Assembly: GCA_904063045.1 (NCBI GenBank)
Contig: CAJFCJ010000008.1
Span: forward strand, 62,001-126,000
Source of the DNA: Dimorphilus gyrociliatus
Lineage: Eukaryota; Animalia; Annelida
Length of the DNA: 64,000 bases
Direction: 5' to 3'
Positions 48,092 to 64,000 of this stretch are shown piece after piece. The first letter of the stretch is position 1. Every line of letters begins with the position of its first letter. The notes under the pieces are model-generated. The model was not told where the DNA came from. It saw nothing but the letters and a program-made list of their open reading frames with translations, and searched no databases. The translations under genes were made by a program, and so were the position numbers.

Positions 48092-51000
48092 TCAAACAAC
48101 AGTTTCGTCCTTCTCTTCTTGTCTTAATAGTCGTTTGCTATCTTCATCGCTATTTTCTAATTGTTTTAACTCACTTTCGTCTTCTTCTCTAGTTTCGTAT
48201 GGAATGTTTCTAATCTGTTCCTTCTTTCGGTCCCAAAATTTTCTGGCAATACCATTTTGTCTGGGGTTGTAAAAGGAACTTTGATGAAAGCCATTCTTTC
48301 CCAAATTTACAGGAGGAGGTGGGAGAGCAACTGAAGAAGACGCGTGTGTATTGTCACTTATAACACTCTCCGTTCGATTGTTATGATCTTTACCAATCGG
48401 TTCTACACGATTTTCAGATACTTCTTCCACTTCTGGTTCGGGTCTTTGAACAATTCCCAGAGCGAAAATGGAAGATATGCTTAGAAGAACACAAAACTGA
48501 CAGAAGGCGCATTCGTAGAAAGTTTGGCTCTTCACTGGCAAGAAAGGTATCCTGTAATCCAATATGAGAAAAACCGATGACACAAAACAGAGAAGATACA
48601 TTATAAAGCACACAAGTACAGCACGGCAATCGCTGATTGTCATGACATTTTCAGAATCCTCGTCTTCCAAATGAAAGCAATGTAGGCATTCGATTCGAAA
48701 GCTCATGAAGAAGAATATTACAGCAAAGAAAGCTGATGGAGCGTAAAGACTTATAAAATCTGGTTGTGTGCATTGAAAATCACCAATTTCCTTTGGCCTG
48801 AAAACAGTTTACAGAGAGGAAATGATTAAACAAACTAAAGAATGAGAGGCAATGAATTACTGAAATTAATATACCTCAGTGTTATTGCTGCTGTCAAACC
48901 AATAACCAGAAGTGGTAAACCGTAGCCAATTAGGTAATACTTAAAACAAGATGATCTGGAATCGACTTCAGCTGTTTCCAATTCGTCGTCTTCAATTGAG
49001 AGAACTTTCTTAAATATTGCTTGTTTAGCAACGTAATTTGCCGATATACTCCAACAGAATCCAGAGAATATAAACAGATTTAATAATAACGGTCTGATTG
49101 AACAAATAAGTGGTGGTTCAATAAAGTCTACGCAAAATAAAGCAGCGCAAAGGCTAAAGCTAACGCATAAATTTGCTATAGAATGTCTCCACTCCGACGG
49201 TGCAGACTTTTGCCATCGACAACATAATATGGCCGATATAATCGATGATAAAAATACAACAGCACAACCAGTAAATGCTATAGATCCCAACAAACGAACT
49301 CGAAAATCAAAATGAAAGAAACTTCGTTTACTCTCCTGACTGACTAAGGCATAGGCTGCTTCAAAATTACTTCTACATTTAAAACTAAGTAAAGCACTGT
49401 CTTCAATATCGATACAAGTAGCGTTAAACCAAACTCCAACTCCAGGTATGAATCTCTTTAGAGAAACTCCCGTATCGTCTTTTCTAATTGTAAAGTCAAC
49501 CTCTCCCGTCACCTCGCCGTTAGGAGAGAATGATGAGTAAATAATTGGATAATTTAAATTTTCTCCAAAATCACTGCCAAATACGGCTTCATTGTCAAAA
49601 ACAACTAGGATAATTCTCGTTGAATCATTTGATGGTGGTAGATGATAACTAGTATATAAATCATAATTATCCCAATTATAATCAGATTCGTTGACATATT
49701 TGGTACATTTAAGACTTTTACCAAATGACGCTGAACATGATATTCCACTATGAGTACTAACCATTTTGGAATAAAAGGTTAAACCATTAAACGTTAATTG
49801 TACAATATCGTCACTACCCAATTTGATGCCATAAGCCAATTTCTTGATTATTTTAAATATCTTTTCCGTTAGGGAATAATTAATGACACTTTGCTTTAAA
49901 ACTGTCGGGTTTGAGTAAATAATTTTAGATATAATCGATAAGACCATATGTGTTGTATCCCGATTTACTGATGTTTTATGAATATGACGATCAATTATAT
50001 TGAGAATAAGTATTAAATTTTTCTTTTCCGACGTGAAAGAAACTGAGTTTTCCATTAAATATTGTCCAAGAATGTTTAAAGAGTTACTTGAATCGTTTTT
50101 ATATAATTTATCCAATAATCTTGTAGAATTAGCTAGAAATTCACAATTTTCTTCGTTTACGTTTGTCCATTTTCCATTTGTATTACAATATCTTTCGATA
50201 TTTGCCTTTCTTGGAGATTTACACTTTTGAATTACCGTTGTATTGCTAACAGTCATTTTCCAGGTATAGTTGCCTTTTAATGAAGAACTATGGTCCAAAC
50301 CGCAAAAGGTATCATTCGAATCATAGACAATTATTTTTATAATATATTTATCAGTGCCATCAGAGCAAGCTAAAATTCCCTGAAGGGAGAGATCAACAAC
50401 TGGAACTGTTAATTTTATATCATGCTTATTTATATCTATATGAAAAGATTCTGATGAATTTGTCCTATTTTTCAAATCAATACCATTTAGTCTCCATTTT
50501 AAATTGCTTGTATCATATTTGGCAGTTGGATCACGCGATTTCATTGTACAATAGGCTTCGAATGAGTCACCTATAAATAATATTTGACTATTTTCAGGTT
50601 GCATAAACGGTAGCGGCGGACAAAGGTCTTCAACAGCCAACTCTGATAATTTCTCTCTTTTAAACCTTTTCTTCCCTCTTGTTATCAATTTACAACTACC
50701 TTCAACCATTATATTCTTTTCCAAGAGCCATACCGTTTCGCATGTGCATTTCAAACGCTTATTTTTCCGTACGTTACTATAAAAAAAAAGAATATAAAAC
50801 TAAAGAAACCTATAATAAAATTCAACAAATACGACTGTCTGTCAATAGAATTAAAGATAACAGTACTTACAGTGACTTTAGGGATTTTAAGTAGAAAAAG
50901 GTTTTGGAAATATAGCTTAATTGATTCTTTTGTAAATTCAATCTTTCAAGTTTTTGTAAACCGCTGTGTATCTCAAATCTTATTAATCTATTACTTTGCA

Positions 51001-54644: not shown

Positions 54645-57229
54645 AATGGTGTCCATAGTTTCGGAACCGATATGGATGAGGACGATTTAGAATTATTCGA
54701 TAATGATGACTTTTATGCCTGGTTGGGCCTGGGGAGAAATGTAAGACGACATATTTTGTGAATTTTCATCAACTTTCAGCATTATGATTTCTTAGATATA
54801 TCGATTTTCAAATATTTTCTGAACGATAATACAATAAAACGTGCTCTCAATACAGGCTACAGCTGAAGAGATAAACAATGCCTATAGGAGAATGAGTAAA
54901 ATATATCACCCAGATAAACATGCATTAGATCAATTGAAGAAAGAAAAAGCCGAAAGACTGTTTAATAAAATTAAGAGAGCTCATGAAGTTTTGTCTGATC
55001 CTCATAAGAAGGTCATATATGATACAACTGGTGAAAAGGGTTTGCAAGCTGAAGGATGGGAATTATTACCGAAACAAAAAACTCCCCAAGAAATATTACT
55101 TGAATATGAGCGATTGAAACAGGAGCGAGAAGAAAGGTTGTTAGAACAAAAAACAAATCCAAAGGGATCTATAGTTGTTGGGATTGATGCTACTGATATA
55201 TTTGATAGATATGATCAAGAAGATGGAATATCATTTGGGCAAGTTTTAAATATTTTAAAATTACATTCAATTGCTGTTTTCATATTTGATGCAATGGTGA
55301 TGCAATAATAACTCTAATAGATCCGAATTACCACACCTAGAAGTTAATCAAATGAGTATTGCTCAATCTATTGAATTTCCTTTGACGGTTAAAGACAGAA
55401 TAGTTCTTCAGGTATATAAATAAAATGATACCTCAGCCACATTTGCTCAAACATGAAACTTCATTTAAGGGTCAGTTGGCAAGTCAAAATGGAAATGGTT
55501 CAGGAGCCGTTGCCACATCCTATCGTCGCGTTCTATCAGATAATAGTTGGGTCGAGGTTCGCACTATGATGGATTATTGACAATTTATTAATAATTAAAT
55601 CAAATTTTATACTTAAACAGACAGAACTTTCTGTGGGAAATGGTTTAGGAGTATCAGTAAGAGGATTTAGACAGCTGTGGGCTAGAAGGTAAAGGCTATT
55701 CATAAAAAATATTAACAATTATTTACACTTTTGTTTATTGAAAAGCTATTGTACAATGACGGCATCTCTGCAAGATACTAGGAAAGGTTTAAGACCATCT
55801 CTAAATATTCGTATGTGTTACAATAAAAATTTGTCATTTAACTTATTAAATGTAATAAATTGTTTTAAACAGTAACTGCATCCCAAATTGATAAAAATAT
55901 ACAAGGAAGACTATCCTGGAATGCGCTACGACCTAGTAGTATACAGTATTCTCTAGTTTATGATAACGAATGTAATCATGGTTCTGTTACTTTAAACGTT
56001 AGTAAAATTTATTTTTAATTTAAGAACTTAAAAAAAACCGAATTAAAACATTTTATAGGTCGGAATTTTAAACTCATACTTATCTGCAACGTATGTTAGG
56101 AAGTTTCCCGACTATGAAATGAAACTAAAAGGATCTGTAAAGTATGATTAATTATTTGAAGTTACAATTAAAGAAGCTAAATAATTTTACCTTTTAGATA
56201 TGGTACTTTTGGGATTTGGTCGGAAGGTTCTTGTGAAAAGAAACTTACTAAGTTTAGTACGGTATCTGGAGCTATATCTGTTGGATCCCATACAGGTGTC
56301 TTATTAAAGATAAGGTTAGTTGAAGAAGTAATTAATGTTGTACAATCGTAATTTTCAACTATATTTTGTCTTATCTTAGAGTTTCAAGAGGAAATATGCA
56401 ATTTTTCTTCCCCATACACTTATCAGACTATGTTGACCCGGCAGCTATATTTTACGGAACATGTATTACCGTTGGCGGCTATTTTGCTCTTAAAAATCTT
56501 TTAATTCTTCCGTTTGTTAAATCGAGAGAAAAAGAAAATCTTCAACGAAAAAAAGGAGAATTCGAAGAATGGTCGAAGGAGCAGAAAAAAAATGCATTAG
56601 CAGAACTTGATTTGATGAAGGAAACCGTTGAAAGAAGCTATAACAACGAAAAAGCTAAAGGAGGTTTAGTTATCAAAAAAGCTCTTTTCGGAAAATTATC
56701 AGGCGAAAATTTACAGTTAGTTGATTTATATATGATTCAATATTTAAGCTTATTTGATAGTATCTATATAATTTGTTTCCTTCAATAGAAAATCTGATTG
56801 CATTGACGTAACCCTACCGATGCAGGCTTTGGTTAACGACTCTAAAATAGTTTTACCTGCTAACACCAATATAGTAAGTATTTTTTACTTTTGAATTAAT
56901 ATTTTTTGTATATTGTTAAAATATTTATTTTGAGAAGAGTCTAAGTGTGTTCATTAATAAATCATTAGAATGACATTTCACCTATTTAATTTCATACTAG
57001 AGTGAACTACCTGGATTCTACGATCCGTGTTTTGGAGAACCTAAAGAGCTATCTATAAAGTACGATTTTAGAAGACGGCCTCATTCTTGCATACTCAATG
57101 AAAAGAAAAAAATTGTCATACCTTGCAAAGGTATTCATCAAAAACTTTGGAATTTTTCGAAAAAATCTAAGAAATTTCCTTTTTTTTTCAGATCATACTT
57201 GCGAAGAATCTGGCGAACCTGTGACCTGA
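54645..57229 (+). CDS. DNAJC11: DnaJ homolog subfamily C member 11, 13 exons (alternative in-frame start at 54672)
   Basis: Exons 54645-54740, 54856-55238, 55321-55411, 55470-55556, 55621-55688, 55746-55810, 55873-55997, 56059-56141, 56198-56314, 56380-56715, 56789-56873, 57001-57130, 57192-57229. J domain with YHPDKH, LEQKTNPKGSI, SQNGNGSG, FFFPIHLSD, IDVTLPMQALV, ELPGFYDPCFGEPKEL. Confidence 0.97.
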
Positions 57230-57350
57230 CAAATTGAAGCTATTTTCAACAGTCTAAAGCTAAATACATAATGTCAAAGTTAAAGAAAAATTTTGGTTTA
57301 AAAGAAATATATGCTATATATATATATATATATATATATAAATTTATATA

Positions 57351-57390
<40 letters not shown>

Positions 57391-59369
57391 GTATGTGTAC
57401 GTAAATACAGATGAGAGTTCCGTATTAGATCCTTAATTGATATCTTGTTAAAATAAAAAAAAAACAACCCGAAAAGAAAAGGAAAGAAGGAAACAATTTT
57501 TTATGAAATTAATAGCTGAGAATTTTTAGATTTAGGATAAAGTCTGCTCTTTGCCACCATCGATTAACTCTAACAAGTGCAAAGAGGCTTTAATTGGGAA
57601 GTAATACAGATAAGTAATCTAATTATGACTCTTTAAGGCCTTAACAATTTCAAATAAATGTATATAGTGGATATTGGCTTGAAAAAAAAACGACAAAGTT
57701 GATGCTAAAGTTTTTACAGTTAACAAAATGTTAAAATAGTTAATTGGATGATCGTTGTAAACATATTGGCCTATTTACCCTAATATAGACTTTCTATTTT
57801 TAGAAATTAAGAATACTGTAACACCATCAGAATCCAGGCAATTGGCCACAGTCGCGACATTATCGGTCTTAGTATTTGCTCTCTTACAAATGCGACGTCC
57901 TCGTTCTCAGCTACTGACTATTTACGTTCCTAACAAGTGGTTTTTGAAAATAAAAAGTAAGTTATGCACTTACGGCCTTAATTCAAACCAAATAAAGGAA
58001 ATGAAATCAGATTATACGTGGGTAGTTTTATCGTTTGAATTTTATTTTTTTACTATAGACATCTCAAACCTACCTATACATTTTTCTGTATTATAAAAAA
58101 GGACTATCATAGCTTGTAATATGTTATTTTACAGCTTAATTCATAGTTTAACGTATAAAATGTGACTAAAGAATTTTTCATAAAGGAAAAGTTGAAAAGC
58201 CTGCACGGTTTGATTAACCTTCATTTATTTTCGTCCAAAGTTCGTTTCGTTTTAGGTCGACGCACCGGCATTTAGAGTTTTATATAGTAAACAAATCTTT
58301 GAATCATTTTAACCTTTAACTTTAATTTATATCTATCTCCTTATAATAGTACATACATAAATGTATACGATATAAATTAATATAAATGCTCCTATAGAAT
58401 TACAATTATAATAGAAAATAAGATAAATTTTTGTGTATAGATTCTTGCGCAATTATAAGATTTTTTCTTATCATGAAAGAAAACAATGGTATTTATAAAC
58501 GGCAGAAATATATATAGGATATATGTAACTATATGGATCATTAGCTAATACTATTCATACTCTTTCAAGAGTTAAAAGTAGGGTAAATAAAAATAACGTT
58601 TTCGTTATAATAACTATTTCATTACATTAAATAAAATTATAGAAATGGTAAATCTTTTTTTTATTTTCTTTTATTGTTAAATGTAAGAAATACCGTCCAA
58701 TTTTCTCCAACAAAAGAACCAATTTTAGTGAAAGTTTTCGGCCAATAGGACTTTGTAATTTTGTTACGTAATAACAAATCGATTTGTATTGAATACCTAA
58801 TATATTTAGCGTCTTACCCAACAAATGATCCACCTTGCCCGCGTAATATCGTAAATTTTAGAATAAATTACCCGTCGTAAATATTTGAAGTGGACAAAAG
58901 GGAGATGAATTGTGATGTAACTTAAGTAGTAAAACGAAAATTTAACCGAAATGTGGTGAAAGTTCGACTTGTATTCTTATTCAAAAATAATAAATAATCA
59001 TTATAGAGCATATCGTCTATACGCAGATACAATTTACATGAATATATATATGTATATATATATTATATAAATATACTGTACATACATAAATTTATCTTTT
59101 AAGTATACAGAGTATAAAGATATTTATATAATTTTGTGAATATACTCATATATAGTTAAAAAGATAACAACTAATACAATATAAAATAAGCTCACATTTA
59201 TTAAGCATATGTATTTTATACTGTACGTATTATGTACATAATATAGCACGGCAGGGGAAGAGAAAAATTAAATAAAAACTTAGAAAATCATCTTTTTCCA
59301 TAAAGAATCGTTTGTAGTATTTACATGTACATATTGTAGAACATATATAACACTATATCTATACATATA

Positions 59370-59417
<48 letters not shown>

Positions 59418-61798
59418 GTGAAATATATTTATCAGGACAATATCTCTTTTTCCTATGATGAACTAATTCAGTTCTATCTCTTTCTCTCTCTCACTCACTC
59501 TCTTAATCTTATTTCTCTAAGATCTTTCGTTCATCTATATACACAAAATATTCATAAAAGGAAAATTTGTTGCAGTGCAATTCGTTTAATTGGAATTTTG
59601 TGTATAAAATTGTTTTTTGATAAGAAATGCTCCATTTAAACCCTTCAGTTATATTTTTATATAAATATATATCAAGTATAATTTGAAAGATTTCTATTTT
59701 TCGATTAATTGATTAATTCCACTCAACTTTTATAGATAAGAGTTTTTCAGATTAGTATTACAAGTTCACATATATTTTTATAGATAAGAATTGAATAGAA
59801 TTGAAATGAAAACGTTCTGAGTGACATTTTAATTGAAGTTTGAAAAAAATAACTGTTCTATAAAAAGCATTGAATAAGATAAGTTATAAAATTGCTTAAA
59901 AAAGTCAGAAGGACACATGAATACAACTTAAATAAACTCTTTAAGAAAACCACAAATGACATATTACTATGACCCTTGACTCTTTTAAAAAAATATAGAT
60001 TAGGAACCTGACAGTAAAAAAAAGAAGACTAGTAGAAAATTGTTTAATTTTCATCAATTGGAGGAATAAAAGGATGGAAAGCACATGTTTTTTTTTTTTA
60101 TTACTTTTTTGTATCTTTATATAGAAGTAAAATCACAGGATAGCTGTATTCCATAGCTAACAGAATACATAGAATATGAGGTCAATTTGTTCACTTTTTA
60201 ATAGAATACACTTAAAAAACAAGATTTGTAAACAAAGTAGAAAAAACAAACACTCACTCGAAAGTAAAGGACATAGTGCCACTATTAGAATCAACCTTAA
60301 GGTCTTTTACCTTTTTTTAATTGATTAATAGGGCAAAATACCCAAAAATCGGTAACAAACAACTCGATACCTGAATGAAACATATTCTTAATGATTCATA
60401 ATCTGTAACACAAACAAATCGCTTTTACAATGAATAAATAGTTAAATCTGTTGCTATATATATAACATAACTTGTTAGTTTGTTAATCAATACCTCCTGT
60501 ATTTTATAAGTATATACGTAATATATTACATAACTAGCCTGAACTACGACTTAATAATTTGTATAAAAACAACAATTATTAAAGTTGTTAGTATTATTAA
60601 AGTAGTTATGTTAAGTATAGGAAAGTACTTCAGTGGTAAAGATTATAGGAATCATTCTCTCTCTCTCTTTCACTTTCATTCAATGCCTTTTCTTTAAAGA
60701 AAAAAGAAAGTCATCATATAAAAAGTTAAGTTGCAATTGGTTTTCATATTTACCTGTTTCTTTTTCTCTATCTCACTCGCTCTAATTCTTTTTCCATTTT
60801 TTTTCTCTTACTTAAGCCTATAATCCCTTTAGATAAGCTAATAAGGAACCATACCTTTTTTTTATTTAATTTTTTTACAACTTTTTTTTTGTCTGAAAAT
60901 TGTCTTATAATTTAATTCTGTCTTTTACAAAATATCTAGGTAACAAGGATTTTACTCTCAAAATGCCTAGTTGCCTTAAAAAATCACAATAACAGCACCT
61001 GTTCTCGAATTAAACACGCAATTTTTGCTCACTCGACAAAATCTAACCTTTTTTCAAAAAGAAAAATACCCCAAGAAAAAAGTTCAAAGGTTCAAAAAAA
61101 ATTCCTAAGGGTCTAAAAAAATTATAATAGGCAAAAAGCAAATATTTGAGTAGAATCAGTTTTGAGAAATGATTTTTAAATATATGCATATATAACAATA
61201 ATATACGTATACTCTCTTTACATTAACTTTCTTAAAGAACAATATAGACTTATAAATAAATAAATAAATAATATATAGTGTTTTATCTCTCTAAAATAGA
61301 TTGCATCCTAAAAACTATACTTTTTCAACTGTTTTATAAATATACTTTCTTATTTTGAACGACTCTTCAACTATTTCTAATTGAATTGTTTGTTATTAAG
61401 TATTTTTTTATCCAATTAAACGGAAATGCACTGTCTTTTTTTTTTTTCATTTTCTTTTTACCTCTTATTTAACAAAACAAATAAAAGTAAACAACAAGAA
61501 CATATTAATATCTAAACGGAGGAGTTTTTGTGCATTTTGTTTTTATGGATTGGTCGGGCTTATTTATTTTTGTTTTTTTGTTGTTTTTTGCAGACTTTGC
61601 AGCGTCGTTGAGAGAAAATAGAGGAATTAGTACATAATTCTAAATGATAGAATATAAAAAAAGGCTGCAAGGGGTGTAACCGCATACCAAAAATGCGTTG
61701 TGTTTATTCAGCGTAGGAGTTTTTTCAATTCAAACTCCACTCTTCGAACTGTTTATAAGTCTGAATAACTTGCATTCAATTTTTTTTCGCAGGCCAGT

Positions 61799-62594
61799 TT
61801 AGTTGTTCAAGTTTTTGGGCCATTTTGTTGAACTACCTAATTCGTCAATACGCAATAATATTCTATTCGATAGAGCCGATTTTCTTATCCTGGCTCTTCG
61901 TTGTTTGCTATCAAACGACAAATATTGCCTCGTTTTCTTCAATTTACACCTCCTTGATGCATGGAAGCGTGCTCTGGCAAAAGCTACATGGTTTTGATAG
62001 CCCGATTCTATCTTTTGCCATAGGCAGTACTTATCTAGCGTCCGATAGTTACAGGCCGATTTACGGCAGGCGGATAATGTCCGAATTTGGACGCCTTTCG
62101 TCCGGATCCTTTTCGAGCATACGAAATGTTTAGTTTCGGTGTTCTGCAGTAAGTAGGGGTAAAAATTCAATTTGCATGGGGACGGTTCCGAGTAAAATAA
62201 TTCGTATAGATGAAATTGGGTAAAATTATTCCATCTCGGCATATTGGCAAATATTCTATTTTTCCGTTTTGTTTGTTTTGATTGAACCATATAGCCGTCG
62301 GCCGTCGTTAGTCGGACTAGTTTAACAGAGTAGAAGCTATCGTCTCCTAAACCGAGCGTTTCGTTCTGTTTAATTAACAAATATAATCGATTAATAAAAG
62401 AAAAGGTAAAAAGACTTAAATTGAGCACAAATAGTGAACAATGTAAAGAAAGGAAAAGAGGATGTCACGAAACCTCTATTAATCATTTCTGTTATTTCTT
62501 ATTTTCTTTTTTACGCCTAACTGGATTAATGACGTAAAATTCATATTACTGTACTTTCTAATAAAATTCATTGATAACACATCTTGTTTTTTTG
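61799..62594 (-). CDS. Divergent fibroblast growth factor, FGF8/17/18-like; exons 62515-62594 (probable) and 61799-62365; signal-peptide exon not located
   Basis: By-eye alignment to FGF8: NFTSLIQ~NFTQHVR, VRLTTADGYMVQ~YQLYSRTSGKHVQ, NRIFAN~KRINAM, LLQNTETKHFVCSK~RVRGAETGLYICMN, KYCLWQK~KDCVFTE, QYLSFDSK~WYMAFTRK, followed by a basic heparin-binding-like stretch. Acceptor aattaaacag precedes 62365. Confidence 0.65.
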
Positions 62595-64000
62595 CTGATA
62601 AAATAAAAAAAAACGATATCGTTGTTCAAAATAAAAAAAATAAAGAAATAAAGAAATTCGTGTTCATCTTTTTCTATTTGTAAAGGGGGCGTCAGAGGAG
62701 TTGTAGTTTAATCGCTTTCTTTTCTCTCGTTAAGATCTCCTTTATATTCAACAATTAATTGGATATTTTTCGCTATGAAGTAGAATGTGGAGAGATAGAG
62801 AGAGGACGAAAGAATGAATGAAGGCATAGAGAAAATTTTTTTCATGAAAGAAAGAAACTCCTTGGCCCATTTACTTTTTTTCATTTTTTTCATTCATTCA
62901 TTCAATCTATCTATCTTTTTCTTTCTCTCAATCTCTACTTTTTTCTCAAAACATTTTCAAATGTCTCAGAATGAACTGGCTATCAATCATAGGCCGATGA
63001 GGTCATTAGAATTAAGTAAGCACTTGGAATTCTTTTCTATTTCTAATCGTTCTTTGCTGCTCGCTGTATAGCAAATAGAACTTGATACAGTTAATCAATC
63101 AATTAGCAGGCAAAGAAAAGCGACGGGGATCACTTCTAGCTTTCTTTTGTTATAGCATGTTTGTTGTCCTTTCTCAAGTTCCTACTCAATAAGCGTTTAA
63201 TAGACGTTAAAAGAATAACATTCAATAGTCTATTCATACTTTTCTAAGGTAAAAGATTTCTAACTTTTTGAATTATGTTCCCAATTAGATTAAAGGGAAA
63301 AAAATGGGCGGGAAGGGTATGTAAGGACGAAGGGGGAGGGGGAGAGGATATATAATAGAATTCTTCCTTTTATTAATTTCACTATTTCTTTATGATTCAT
63401 AATAATTAGATTGTCAAGATAAAAAGTTATCTTTTATATTCTAATGATGACTTGATTATTCATTTTAGAACTTTGAAAAGGCCCCTTTCGTCCTCTTATA
63501 GATTTCAAATTTACTGGAATTTAATTAAAATAGACGGTATGAAATATGCATATTAACATAATTTATTTATATTATTATTAAAAAACTGACGTCTCCCTCG
63601 TAATTAATGGATTTTTAAGAATTATTTGTCGCTTTCTTTTTGTCCACTTCTTCTTGAGTATAAACAAATTCTATCCTTGAATTTAACAAATGGATTGACT
63701 TTGAAAGACCTATGTCAACTTTTTACTGCCATCAGTCGATTATGTAATTCCCAATTGTAAATTATTCCCTACCTTACTATAAATGATGTAATAGAGGGGA
63801 ATTTCGCCTACTAATTAGTCGTTTTACGAGGCAAAAACGAGAATGAATGATATACGAATAGCACGTGCAATTTTGAAAGTTCGCGTGACATTTTTCCGAT
63901 TCTTTTTCAGTTTCGAACGTGACCAAAATATCACGCGGGAAAAATCATTCACGCACGAAAGTTATAATAAAGTTCTATATATTAATTAAATAAATACAGA

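What the first reader, a model, noticed from the sequence alone, without database searches (positions are those of the whole stretch)
61799..62594. Hidden, highly divergent FGF8/17/18-like ligand with a single-exon core and extra cysteines
Seen: a 189-codon terminal exon with the ordered FGF landmarks (beta1 xLxT..G.xVQ, RIxA, xTETxxFxC, CxW/F, YLSF), preceded by a probable exon containing NFT. It has six Cys in the core, insertions (SEPSPCKLNF, SACRKSAC) and a very basic surface. Known: FGF cores normally span three exons and the FGF8 subfamily carries an N-terminal NFTxHV segment. Inference: a fast-evolving, intron-depleted FGF8-type ligand that automatic annotation would likely call hypothetical. 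The extra Cys could form lineage-specific disulfides that alter receptor or heparan specificity.
Basis: partly seen in the sequence, partly recalled or inferred. Interest (0 to 1): 0.75.

Follow-up and report, generated by a model that had tools for sequence, protein, structure and literature searches.

The report
Orphan basic gene, possibly hidden FGF
This is a real, conserved but unrecognisable small gene of a tiny marine worm; weak structure predictions suggest the three-lobed fold shared by FGF and IL-1 signalling proteins, so it may be an FGF missed in a genome published as having none, but this is not shown.

Summary
The open frame exists: 188 codons plus stop, minus strand, 61799-62365. 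It is a real coding exon. It is GC-richer than its flanks and single copy. A related species keeps it with only in-frame indels and dN/dS 0.25.

The best start is a conserved six-codon mini-exon (62469-62486) joined by a 103-nt intron. That gives a leaderless, very basic protein of about 194 aa.

No sequence test supports FGF membership. Pfam, PDB, a 1.84-billion-protein HMMER search, hhalign and an unfiltered HMM built from genuine FGFs all gave nothing significant. The PROSITE FGF signature is absent.

Two weak leads point to a beta-trefoil fold:
- Protein-language-model neighbours are all trefoil families.
- A low-confidence AlphaFold model of the core (pLDDT 45) has only beta-trefoils among its top 50 structural neighbours. 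IL-1 and FGF18/8b/21/4/19 are among them, with Z no higher than 4.8.

Verdict: a genuine orphan gene, probably a cytokine-type beta-trefoil. It is plausibly (about 45%) a very divergent FGF. The FGF8/17/18 assignment and the extra-disulphide idea are unsupported. This scan has already noted another hidden FGF candidate on other DNA of this genome.

The parts
61799..62365 (-). Main coding exon: 188 codons plus TAA stop. It encodes the whole putative beta-trefoil core (about residues 9-152) and a very conserved basic C-terminal tail (about residues 153-188).
   Evidence: The frame is open and GC is 41% against 28% in the flanks. Against the related species (L004) only in-frame indels occur (6 and 3 nt). 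Differences by codon position are 21/21/46. dN/dS is 0.25 with dS 0.46, and 0.215 for the 41 codons before the first conserved internal Met. The gene is single copy in the genome.
62366..62468 (-). Candidate intron, 103 nt, running GTGACA...TTAATTAAACAG.
   Evidence: The GT donor and the ACAG acceptor are conserved in the relative. Its length there is 108 nt, so the difference is not a multiple of 3. Identity is 73% with 1- and 4-nt indels. In the relative a TGA lies four codons upstream of the acceptor in the exon's frame. The published median intron in this species is 66 bp. There is no transcript evidence.
62469..62486 (-). Candidate start mini-exon, six codons (MINRGF; MINGGF in the relative), phase 0.
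   Evidence: An aligned ATG and an aligned GT donor are found in both species. An in-frame stop lies just upstream in both. The phase fits the acceptor at 62365. The mini-exon sits in an 89%-identical block. This is inferred, not shown.
61335..61798 (-). Conserved 3' flank, probably the 3' UTR, with AATAAA at 61703-61708.
   Evidence: The first 162 nt after the stop are 95.7% identical to the relative, more than the CDS at 84.8%. The next 300 nt are 88% identical, and conservation collapses beyond 61334 to 59%. There is no significant RNA structure (z -0.49) and no Rfam family.
62940..63130 (.). Conserved upstream non-coding block, a candidate promoter or enhancer.
   Evidence: It is 92% identical to the relative over 191 nt and holds no conserved open frame. 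It contains TAAT/ATTGAT-type motifs. Its function is inferred.

Best explanation
The locus is a genuine single-copy gene restricted to this lineage. It probably has two coding exons: a six-codon start exon at 62486-62469, a 103-nt intron, and a 188-codon exon at 62365-61802. The product would be about 194 aa, with no signal peptide, pI about 10, and one conserved N-x-T sequon.

Its roughly 140-residue core most likely folds as a cytokine-type beta-trefoil. I read it as a very divergent FGF-family protein that has lost the introns inside the core. On that reading the basic cluster in the last third (the segment from AFARAR to KKTRQ) lies where FGFs bind heparan sulphate. The protein would then act either as a leaderless, unconventionally exported FGFR ligand like FGF1/2, or inside the cell like the FGF-homologous factors.

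Shown here: the gene is coding and under purifying selection, its core is intron-free, and its composition is basic. Inferred: the start exon, the fold, FGF ancestry, and any receptor or heparan binding. The FGF8/17/18 subfamily assignment is not part of this explanation.
For: Coding and constraint.

Start and intron model. The intron size fits the species.

Fold:
- In two protein-language-model searches every named neighbour is a trefoil-clan family (Fascin, FRG1, CDtoxinA, RicinB, AbfB, inhibitor I66), with scores of about 0.9.
- The AlphaFold model of the core alone is all-beta, with pLDDT 45 and pTM 0.44.

Sequence hints:
- The only hhalign segment and the best HMM segment against true FGFs fall on the expected beta5-beta6 and beta9-beta11 regions, and they are co-linear.
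- A genuine viral FGF also hits Pfam Fascin weakly (E 0.0056), so Fascin-type neighbours are compatible with an FGF.

Context: the published genome paper reports no bona fide FGF ligand in D. gyrociliatus (PMC7854359). Lophotrochozoan FGFs are described as 'quite divergent' (PMC3420111).
Against: No sequence method gives a significant FGF match:
- Pfam at E<=10.
- A six-frame PF00167 scan and an FGF-profile scan of the whole genome.
- PDB phmmer and hmmsearch.
- phmmer against 1.84 billion proteins.
- hhalign, Prob 0.4%.
- An unfiltered HMM: 2.2 bits, p about 0.05, and -0.1 bits for the relative.
- The PROSITE FGF signature is absent, although only 6 of 14 true FGF controls match it.

The structural evidence is fragile:
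- Only one of five AlphaFold models reached pLDDT 45.
- The full-length run (pLDDT 33) drew residues 124-179 as one helix.
- IL-1-family chains score highest.

Other points against: no signal peptide, no FGF-type intron positions, no FGF8-type synteny, and no transcript evidence.
Confidence: 0.45

Rival explanations
1. It is a beta-trefoil protein but not an FGF. It could be an IL-1-like leaderless cytokine-type trefoil, or a new animal trefoil family such as a lectin-like or fascin/FRG1-like nuclear protein.
Confidence: 0.3
2. It is a real orphan protein of some other fold, or partly disordered. An example would be a basic nucleic-acid-binding or nuclear protein. The trefoil signals would then be artefacts of composition and of weak models.
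For: The language-model recognition score is low at 1506, and the tool states that a third of shuffled proteins also get ten hits from a single clan. AlphaFold confidence is low and the two runs disagree. The C-terminal 35 residues are the best-conserved part and are predicted helical and basic. There is no signal peptide.
Against: Two different networks converge on the same rare fold. Trefoils fill all 50 top rows of 48,161 chains, which is hard to get from an unstructured model. The predicted strands fall in trefoil-like order.
Confidence: 0.2
3. It is not a gene. The open frame would be a chance feature inside conserved non-coding DNA.
For: The flanks are as conserved as the frame or more so (3' flank 95.7%, upstream block 92%). 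No transcript evidence was available. An exact look-up of two versions of the product found neither in the protein collection.
Against: dN/dS is 0.25. Third-position changes are about twice those at positions 1 and 2. Only in-frame indels occur inside the frame, against many out-of-frame indels outside it. The frame is open in both species. The GC rise is confined to the frame.
Confidence: 0.04

Closest known systems
Fibroblast growth factor family (Pfam PF00167), leaderless FGF1/2 type or intracellular FHF (FGF11-14) type
   Same: A stand-alone, strongly basic domain of about 140 residues. The predicted all-beta, trefoil-like topology has FGF18, 8b, 21, 4, 19, 12, 20 and 9 among its structural neighbours. 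Basic residues are concentrated in the last third, where FGFs bind heparan sulphate. There is no signal peptide, as in FGF1/2 and the FHFs (from established knowledge). There are short co-linear resemblances at beta5-beta6 and beta9-beta11.
   Different: There is no significant sequence or profile match and no PROSITE signature. The core is in one exon rather than three. Loops are longer. A conserved 35-residue basic helical tail is present. The Trp of beta10 and the glycine box are lacking.
FGF8/17/18/24 subfamily
   Same: The strings resembling 'G..VQ', 'RI.A', 'ET..[FY].C' and 'KTRQ', and a basic C-terminal tail. These resemblances are judged from memory of vertebrate FGF8/18 and are a lead, not a test.
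   Different: No signal peptide or N-terminal exon was found. The 'NFT' exon is not conserved. The conserved N-x-T lies inside the core. OGA, a vertebrate FGF8 neighbour, is on contig 15 and not contig 8, and nucleoplasmin was not found. No FGF8-family sequence could be obtained by reference, so no direct comparison was made.
Interleukin-1 family (beta-trefoil cytokines)
   Different: To my knowledge the IL-1 family is not known outside vertebrates. IL-1s are not strongly basic. No sequence similarity was detected.
Baculovirus/iridovirus FGFs and insect Branchless-like FGFs (used here as reference FGFs)
   Same: Single-exon FGF cores of similar length, found by a motif scan and confirmed by Pfam at E 1e-24 to 3e-28.
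   Different: They match PF00167 strongly, and the worm protein does not match them.

Membership tests
FGF (PF00167) | Significant match to the family HMM | tested here: not met
   hmmscan against Pfam at E<=10 found no family for either the exon or the longer ORF. A six-frame PF00167 scan of the whole genome found 0 matches. HMMER's speed filters hide matches above about E 0.1-1.
FGF (PF00167) | Profile-profile or unfiltered-HMM similarity to bona fide FGFs | tested here: not met
   hhalign of A1 against four Pfam-verified FGFs gave Prob 0.4% and E 0.16 over 16 columns. hmmsearch --max with a 14-sequence FGF HMM gave 2.2 bits, and 101 of 2000 shuffles scored as high; the relative scored -0.1 bits. 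The reference set is viral and Branchless-like only, so its power is limited.
FGF (PF00167) | PROSITE HBGF/FGF signature (PS00247; pattern recalled from established knowledge) | tested here: not met
   A regex search found it in neither species. Only 6 of 14 true FGF controls matched, so the test has low sensitivity.
FGF (PF00167) | Beta-trefoil fold of 12 strands | tested here: inconclusive
FGF (PF00167) | Core split by the two conserved FGF introns (three coding exons) | tested here: not met
   The whole core lies in one uninterrupted exon, 62365-61802. This could reflect intron loss, which is frequent in this genome.
FGF (PF00167) | Binding and activation of FGFR; heparan-sulphate binding | not testable with these tools
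   This needs binding or cell assays. Only the basic composition (pI 10.3) is shown.
FGF8/17/18/24 subfamily | Cleavable signal peptide and N-terminal exon(s) ahead of the core | tested here: not met
The best start is a six-codon exon without hydrophobic residues. The maximum Kyte-Doolittle value over 15 residues in the exon is 0.54. No coding-looking exon was found in the 6 kb upstream. There are no transcript data, so an undetected exon cannot be excluded.
FGF8/17/18/24 subfamily | Linkage to vertebrate FGF8/17/18 neighbours (NPM, OGA) | tested here: not met
   OGA (PF07555) lies on contig 15. Nucleoplasmin was not found anywhere, and its control search also returned nothing. The neighbours here are DNAJC11 and GPCRs. 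This is a weak test, and spiralian FGF loci could not be inspected.
Interleukin-1 family | Sequence match to IL-1 family proteins or models | tested here: not met
   Neither Pfam nor the PDB sequence searches gave an IL-1 match.

The most novel reading that the evidence does not exclude
This gene, together with the MICU-adjacent candidate noted earlier by this scan, would be a missing FGF ligand of Dimorphilus gyrociliatus. It would be an intron-less-core, leaderless FGF so divergent that HMMs cannot see it. The published 'loss of FGF ligands' in Dinophilidae, and its proposed link to the loss of chaetae, would then be a detection failure and not a gene loss. An even more novel alternative that the evidence does not exclude is an invertebrate IL-1-like leaderless trefoil cytokine.
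Probability: 0.4. Interest if true: 0.8.

Novelty: new variant of a known kind. Interest (0 to 1): 0.55.

Why it matters
[quoted passage not shown] It ties the loss of the FGF ligand to the loss of chaetae (PMC7854359). A conserved, expressed FGF-like ligand would overturn that inference. It would also show how far an FGF sequence can drift while the fold is kept.

Even if it is not an FGF, it is a strongly constrained orphan gene. It sits in a gene-poor interval with conserved non-coding blocks on both sides, which makes it a good candidate for a lineage-specific regulator. As it stands the evidence reaches only 'probably beta-trefoil, possibly FGF'.

Tried and rejected
1. In the relative the ATG is lost, the indels are out of frame, and identity is 65%.
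2. ORF 62708-62893 (minus strand) with a signal-peptide-like hydrophobic stretch: rejected. The relative carries a 64-nt insertion and a frameshift, and the stretch overlaps an inverted repeat.
3. T-rich 'MNT...' frame at 62667: poly-T translated as Phe, with a stop in the window. Rejected.
4. The 'MYYW' start of P0002: an artefact of a gene caller that read TGA as Trp.
5. Weak own-genome hit on contig 62 (E 0.46): it lies in a SEC63-type DnaJ gene and is a chance match.
6. Internal three-fold repeat: none above shuffles.
7. Rfam and RNA structure for the ultra-conserved 3' flank: nothing.
8. FGF8-type synteny (NPM, OGA): none found.
9. The iridovirus FGF as a seed to reach cellular FGFs: the word search returned almost only viral FGFs. 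No FGF8/17/18 sequence could be obtained by reference, so none was compared.
10. Full-length AlphaFold run: uninformative, pLDDT 33.
11. Foldseek on the core model: no significant hit, best E 0.22.
12. I considered an AlphaFold run with FGF rows added to the alignment and rejected it as circular.

Full report
**What is there.** On the minus strand the frame is open from 62464 to the TAA at 61799-61801. An acceptor-like T-rich tract ending in ACAG precedes 62365, which gives a 188-codon terminal exon. The exon is 41% G+C against 28% in its flanks. A frame this long would be open by chance with a probability of about 1e-6 to 3e-8. The product is very basic: pI 10.3, with 38 K+R against 12 D+E. 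It has six Cys. The genome has 77.9 Mb in 349 contigs. Earlier notes of this scan name it Dimorphilus gyrociliatus. I did not verify the species independently.

**Is it a gene?** Both the word search and a full HMMER pass over 1.84 billion representatives found a single cluster, P0001/P0002, from Logan assemblies of four sequencing runs. The contigs (L004-L006) are colinear with the window from about 63340 to 61000. They break at low-complexity runs, so they are genomic DNA of a related species and carry no expression evidence.

- Inside the exon the two species differ by only two in-frame indels, of 6 and 3 nt.
- Differences by codon position are 21, 21 and 46.
- dN/dS is 0.25 with dS 0.46. 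It is 0.215 for the 41 codons upstream of the first conserved internal Met.
- Outside the exon, indels are frequent and out of frame.
- The gene is single copy.

It is therefore a real coding exon under purifying selection, and it needs a start codon from upstream.

**Gene model.** In the relative its ATG reads ATA, and the stretch has 30-, 11-, 3- and 19-nt indels at 65% identity. A hydrophobic ORF at 62708-62893 is also not conserved.

I scanned the alignment for ATGs and GT donors shared by both species, with an open frame between them. This left one good candidate:

- The start ATG is at 62486 and is followed by five codons (MINRGF; MINGGF in the relative).
- The donor is GTGACA in both species.
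- The intron is 103 nt here and 108 nt in the relative.
- The phase is 0, which matches the acceptor.
- An in-frame stop lies just upstream in both species.

The published median intron in this species is 66 bp. The predicted protein of about 194 aa has no hydrophobic leader. The highest 15-residue Kyte-Doolittle mean in the large exon is 0.54. No coding-looking exon lies in the 6 kb upstream.

The joined product was neither built nor searched. The mini-exon is too short to search.

**FGF tested by sequence.** Every test was negative.

- Pfam at E<=10 gave nothing.
- A six-frame PF00167 scan of the genome gave nothing.
- PDB searches with the single sequence and with a profile gave no FGF.

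To get true FGFs by reference, I scanned IMG/VR with a degenerate C.F.E....N.YN.Y motif. This recovered baculovirus and iridovirus FGFs, which Pfam confirmed at E 1e-24 to 3e-28. A profile search added further viral FGFs and one insect Branchless-like FGF. These natural sequences served only as comparison material. I made and kept no altered or consensus viral sequence. The alignment tool prints a majority line of its own accord.

- hhalign of the worm pair against these FGFs gave Prob 0.4% over 16 columns.
- An unfiltered HMM of 14 FGFs scored the exon at 2.2 bits, which 101 of 2000 shuffles equalled. The relative scored -0.1 bits.
- The same profile found nothing in the genome.
- The PROSITE FGF signature is absent, although only 6 of the 14 controls carry it.

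The two best local segments do fall on the expected beta5-beta6 and beta9-beta11 regions, and they are co-linear. That is suggestive, not significant.

The Cys pair in it is not conserved in any case.

No FGF8/17/18 sequence could be obtained by reference. The subfamily claim therefore rests only on remembered resemblance.

**Fold.** Two leads agree.

1. Two protein-language-model searches gave only trefoil-clan families as named neighbours: Fascin, FRG1, CDtoxinA, ricin-B, AbfB and inhibitor I66. Scores were about 0.9. Recognition was low and few features were shared, which the tool itself rates as weak. A genuine viral FGF also touches Pfam Fascin at E 0.0056, so such neighbours are compatible with an FGF.

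2. AlphaFold on the whole exon failed (pLDDT 33). On the core alone (residues 9-156) one of the five models reached pLDDT 45 and pTM 0.44 and was all-beta.
   - Foldseek found nothing significant, though trefoils were frequent among its top rows.

**Synteny and context.** The neighbours are DNAJC11 (tail to tail), an adhesion-type GPCR and a rhodopsin-type GPCR. OGA is on another contig and nucleoplasmin was not found. No FGF-type synteny was seen, but spiralian FGF loci could not be inspected.

The gene sits in a coding-poor interval. The 3' flank is 95.7% identical to the relative, which is more conserved than the CDS, and an upstream block is 92% identical.

[quoted passage not shown] Oulion et al. 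note that lophotrochozoan FGFs are quite divergent (PMC3420111). None of the papers returned by my search for 'Dimorphilus gyrociliatus' and 'FGF' had a title or abstract about an FGF in this worm; I did not read them beyond that. This scan has already noted a different hidden FGF candidate beside MICU2/3 elsewhere in this genome. I could not locate it to compare the two.

- Most likely (about 45%): a very divergent, leaderless, FGF-like beta-trefoil with an intron-free core.
- About 30%: another kind of trefoil, IL-1-like or new.
- About 20%: an orphan of another fold.
- A few per cent: not a gene.

The FGF8/17/18 assignment, the NFT exon and the conserved extra disulphides are not supported. 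No contig looked human.

Noticed in passing
window 61335-61801 (minus strand, just after the stop): The 3' flank is more conserved between the two species than the coding sequence. It is 95.7% identical over the first 162 nt, against 84.8% in the CDS. AATAAA lies at 61703-61708. There is no significant fold and no Rfam match. It is possibly a regulatory 3' UTR.
   Followed up: partly
window 62940-63130: A 191-nt upstream block is 92% identical to the relative and has no conserved ORF. It is rich in TAAT/ATTGAT-type motifs such as TAATTGATTGATTAA. It is a candidate promoter or enhancer in a genome reported to rely on proximal regulation.
   Followed up: partly
window 62790-62925: An imperfect inverted repeat has 33-nt arms, 73% complementary and 70 nt apart. 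It draws sub-threshold Rfam hits to plant miRNA precursors on both strands. The relative carries a 64-nt insertion here. It is probably a low-complexity hairpin, not a miRNA.
   Followed up: partly
L004:1067-1651 (protein P0002): The Logan gene call starts 'MYYW', which reads a TGA as Trp (genetic code 4) in an AT-rich animal contig. Such calls put false N-termini into the protein collection.
   Followed up: yes
window 56800-61300 and 62500-68000 (L001): About 4.5 kb on one side of the gene and 5.5 kb on the other hold no convincing coding exon. That is unusual for this compact genome and is typical of loci with much regulatory DNA.
   Followed up: partly
window 48095-50799 (minus strand): A large exon of an adhesion/secretin-type GPCR has only weak HRM and 7tm_2 matches (E about 5e-4). 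It is a divergent receptor beside DNAJC11 (54838-56785, plus strand).
   Followed up: no
L008:196-651 (IMG/VR contig, grouper iridovirus-like): A viral FGF22-like protein matches Pfam FGF at 3e-28 and also Fascin at 0.0056. This shows that trefoil families cross-hit weakly.
   Followed up: no
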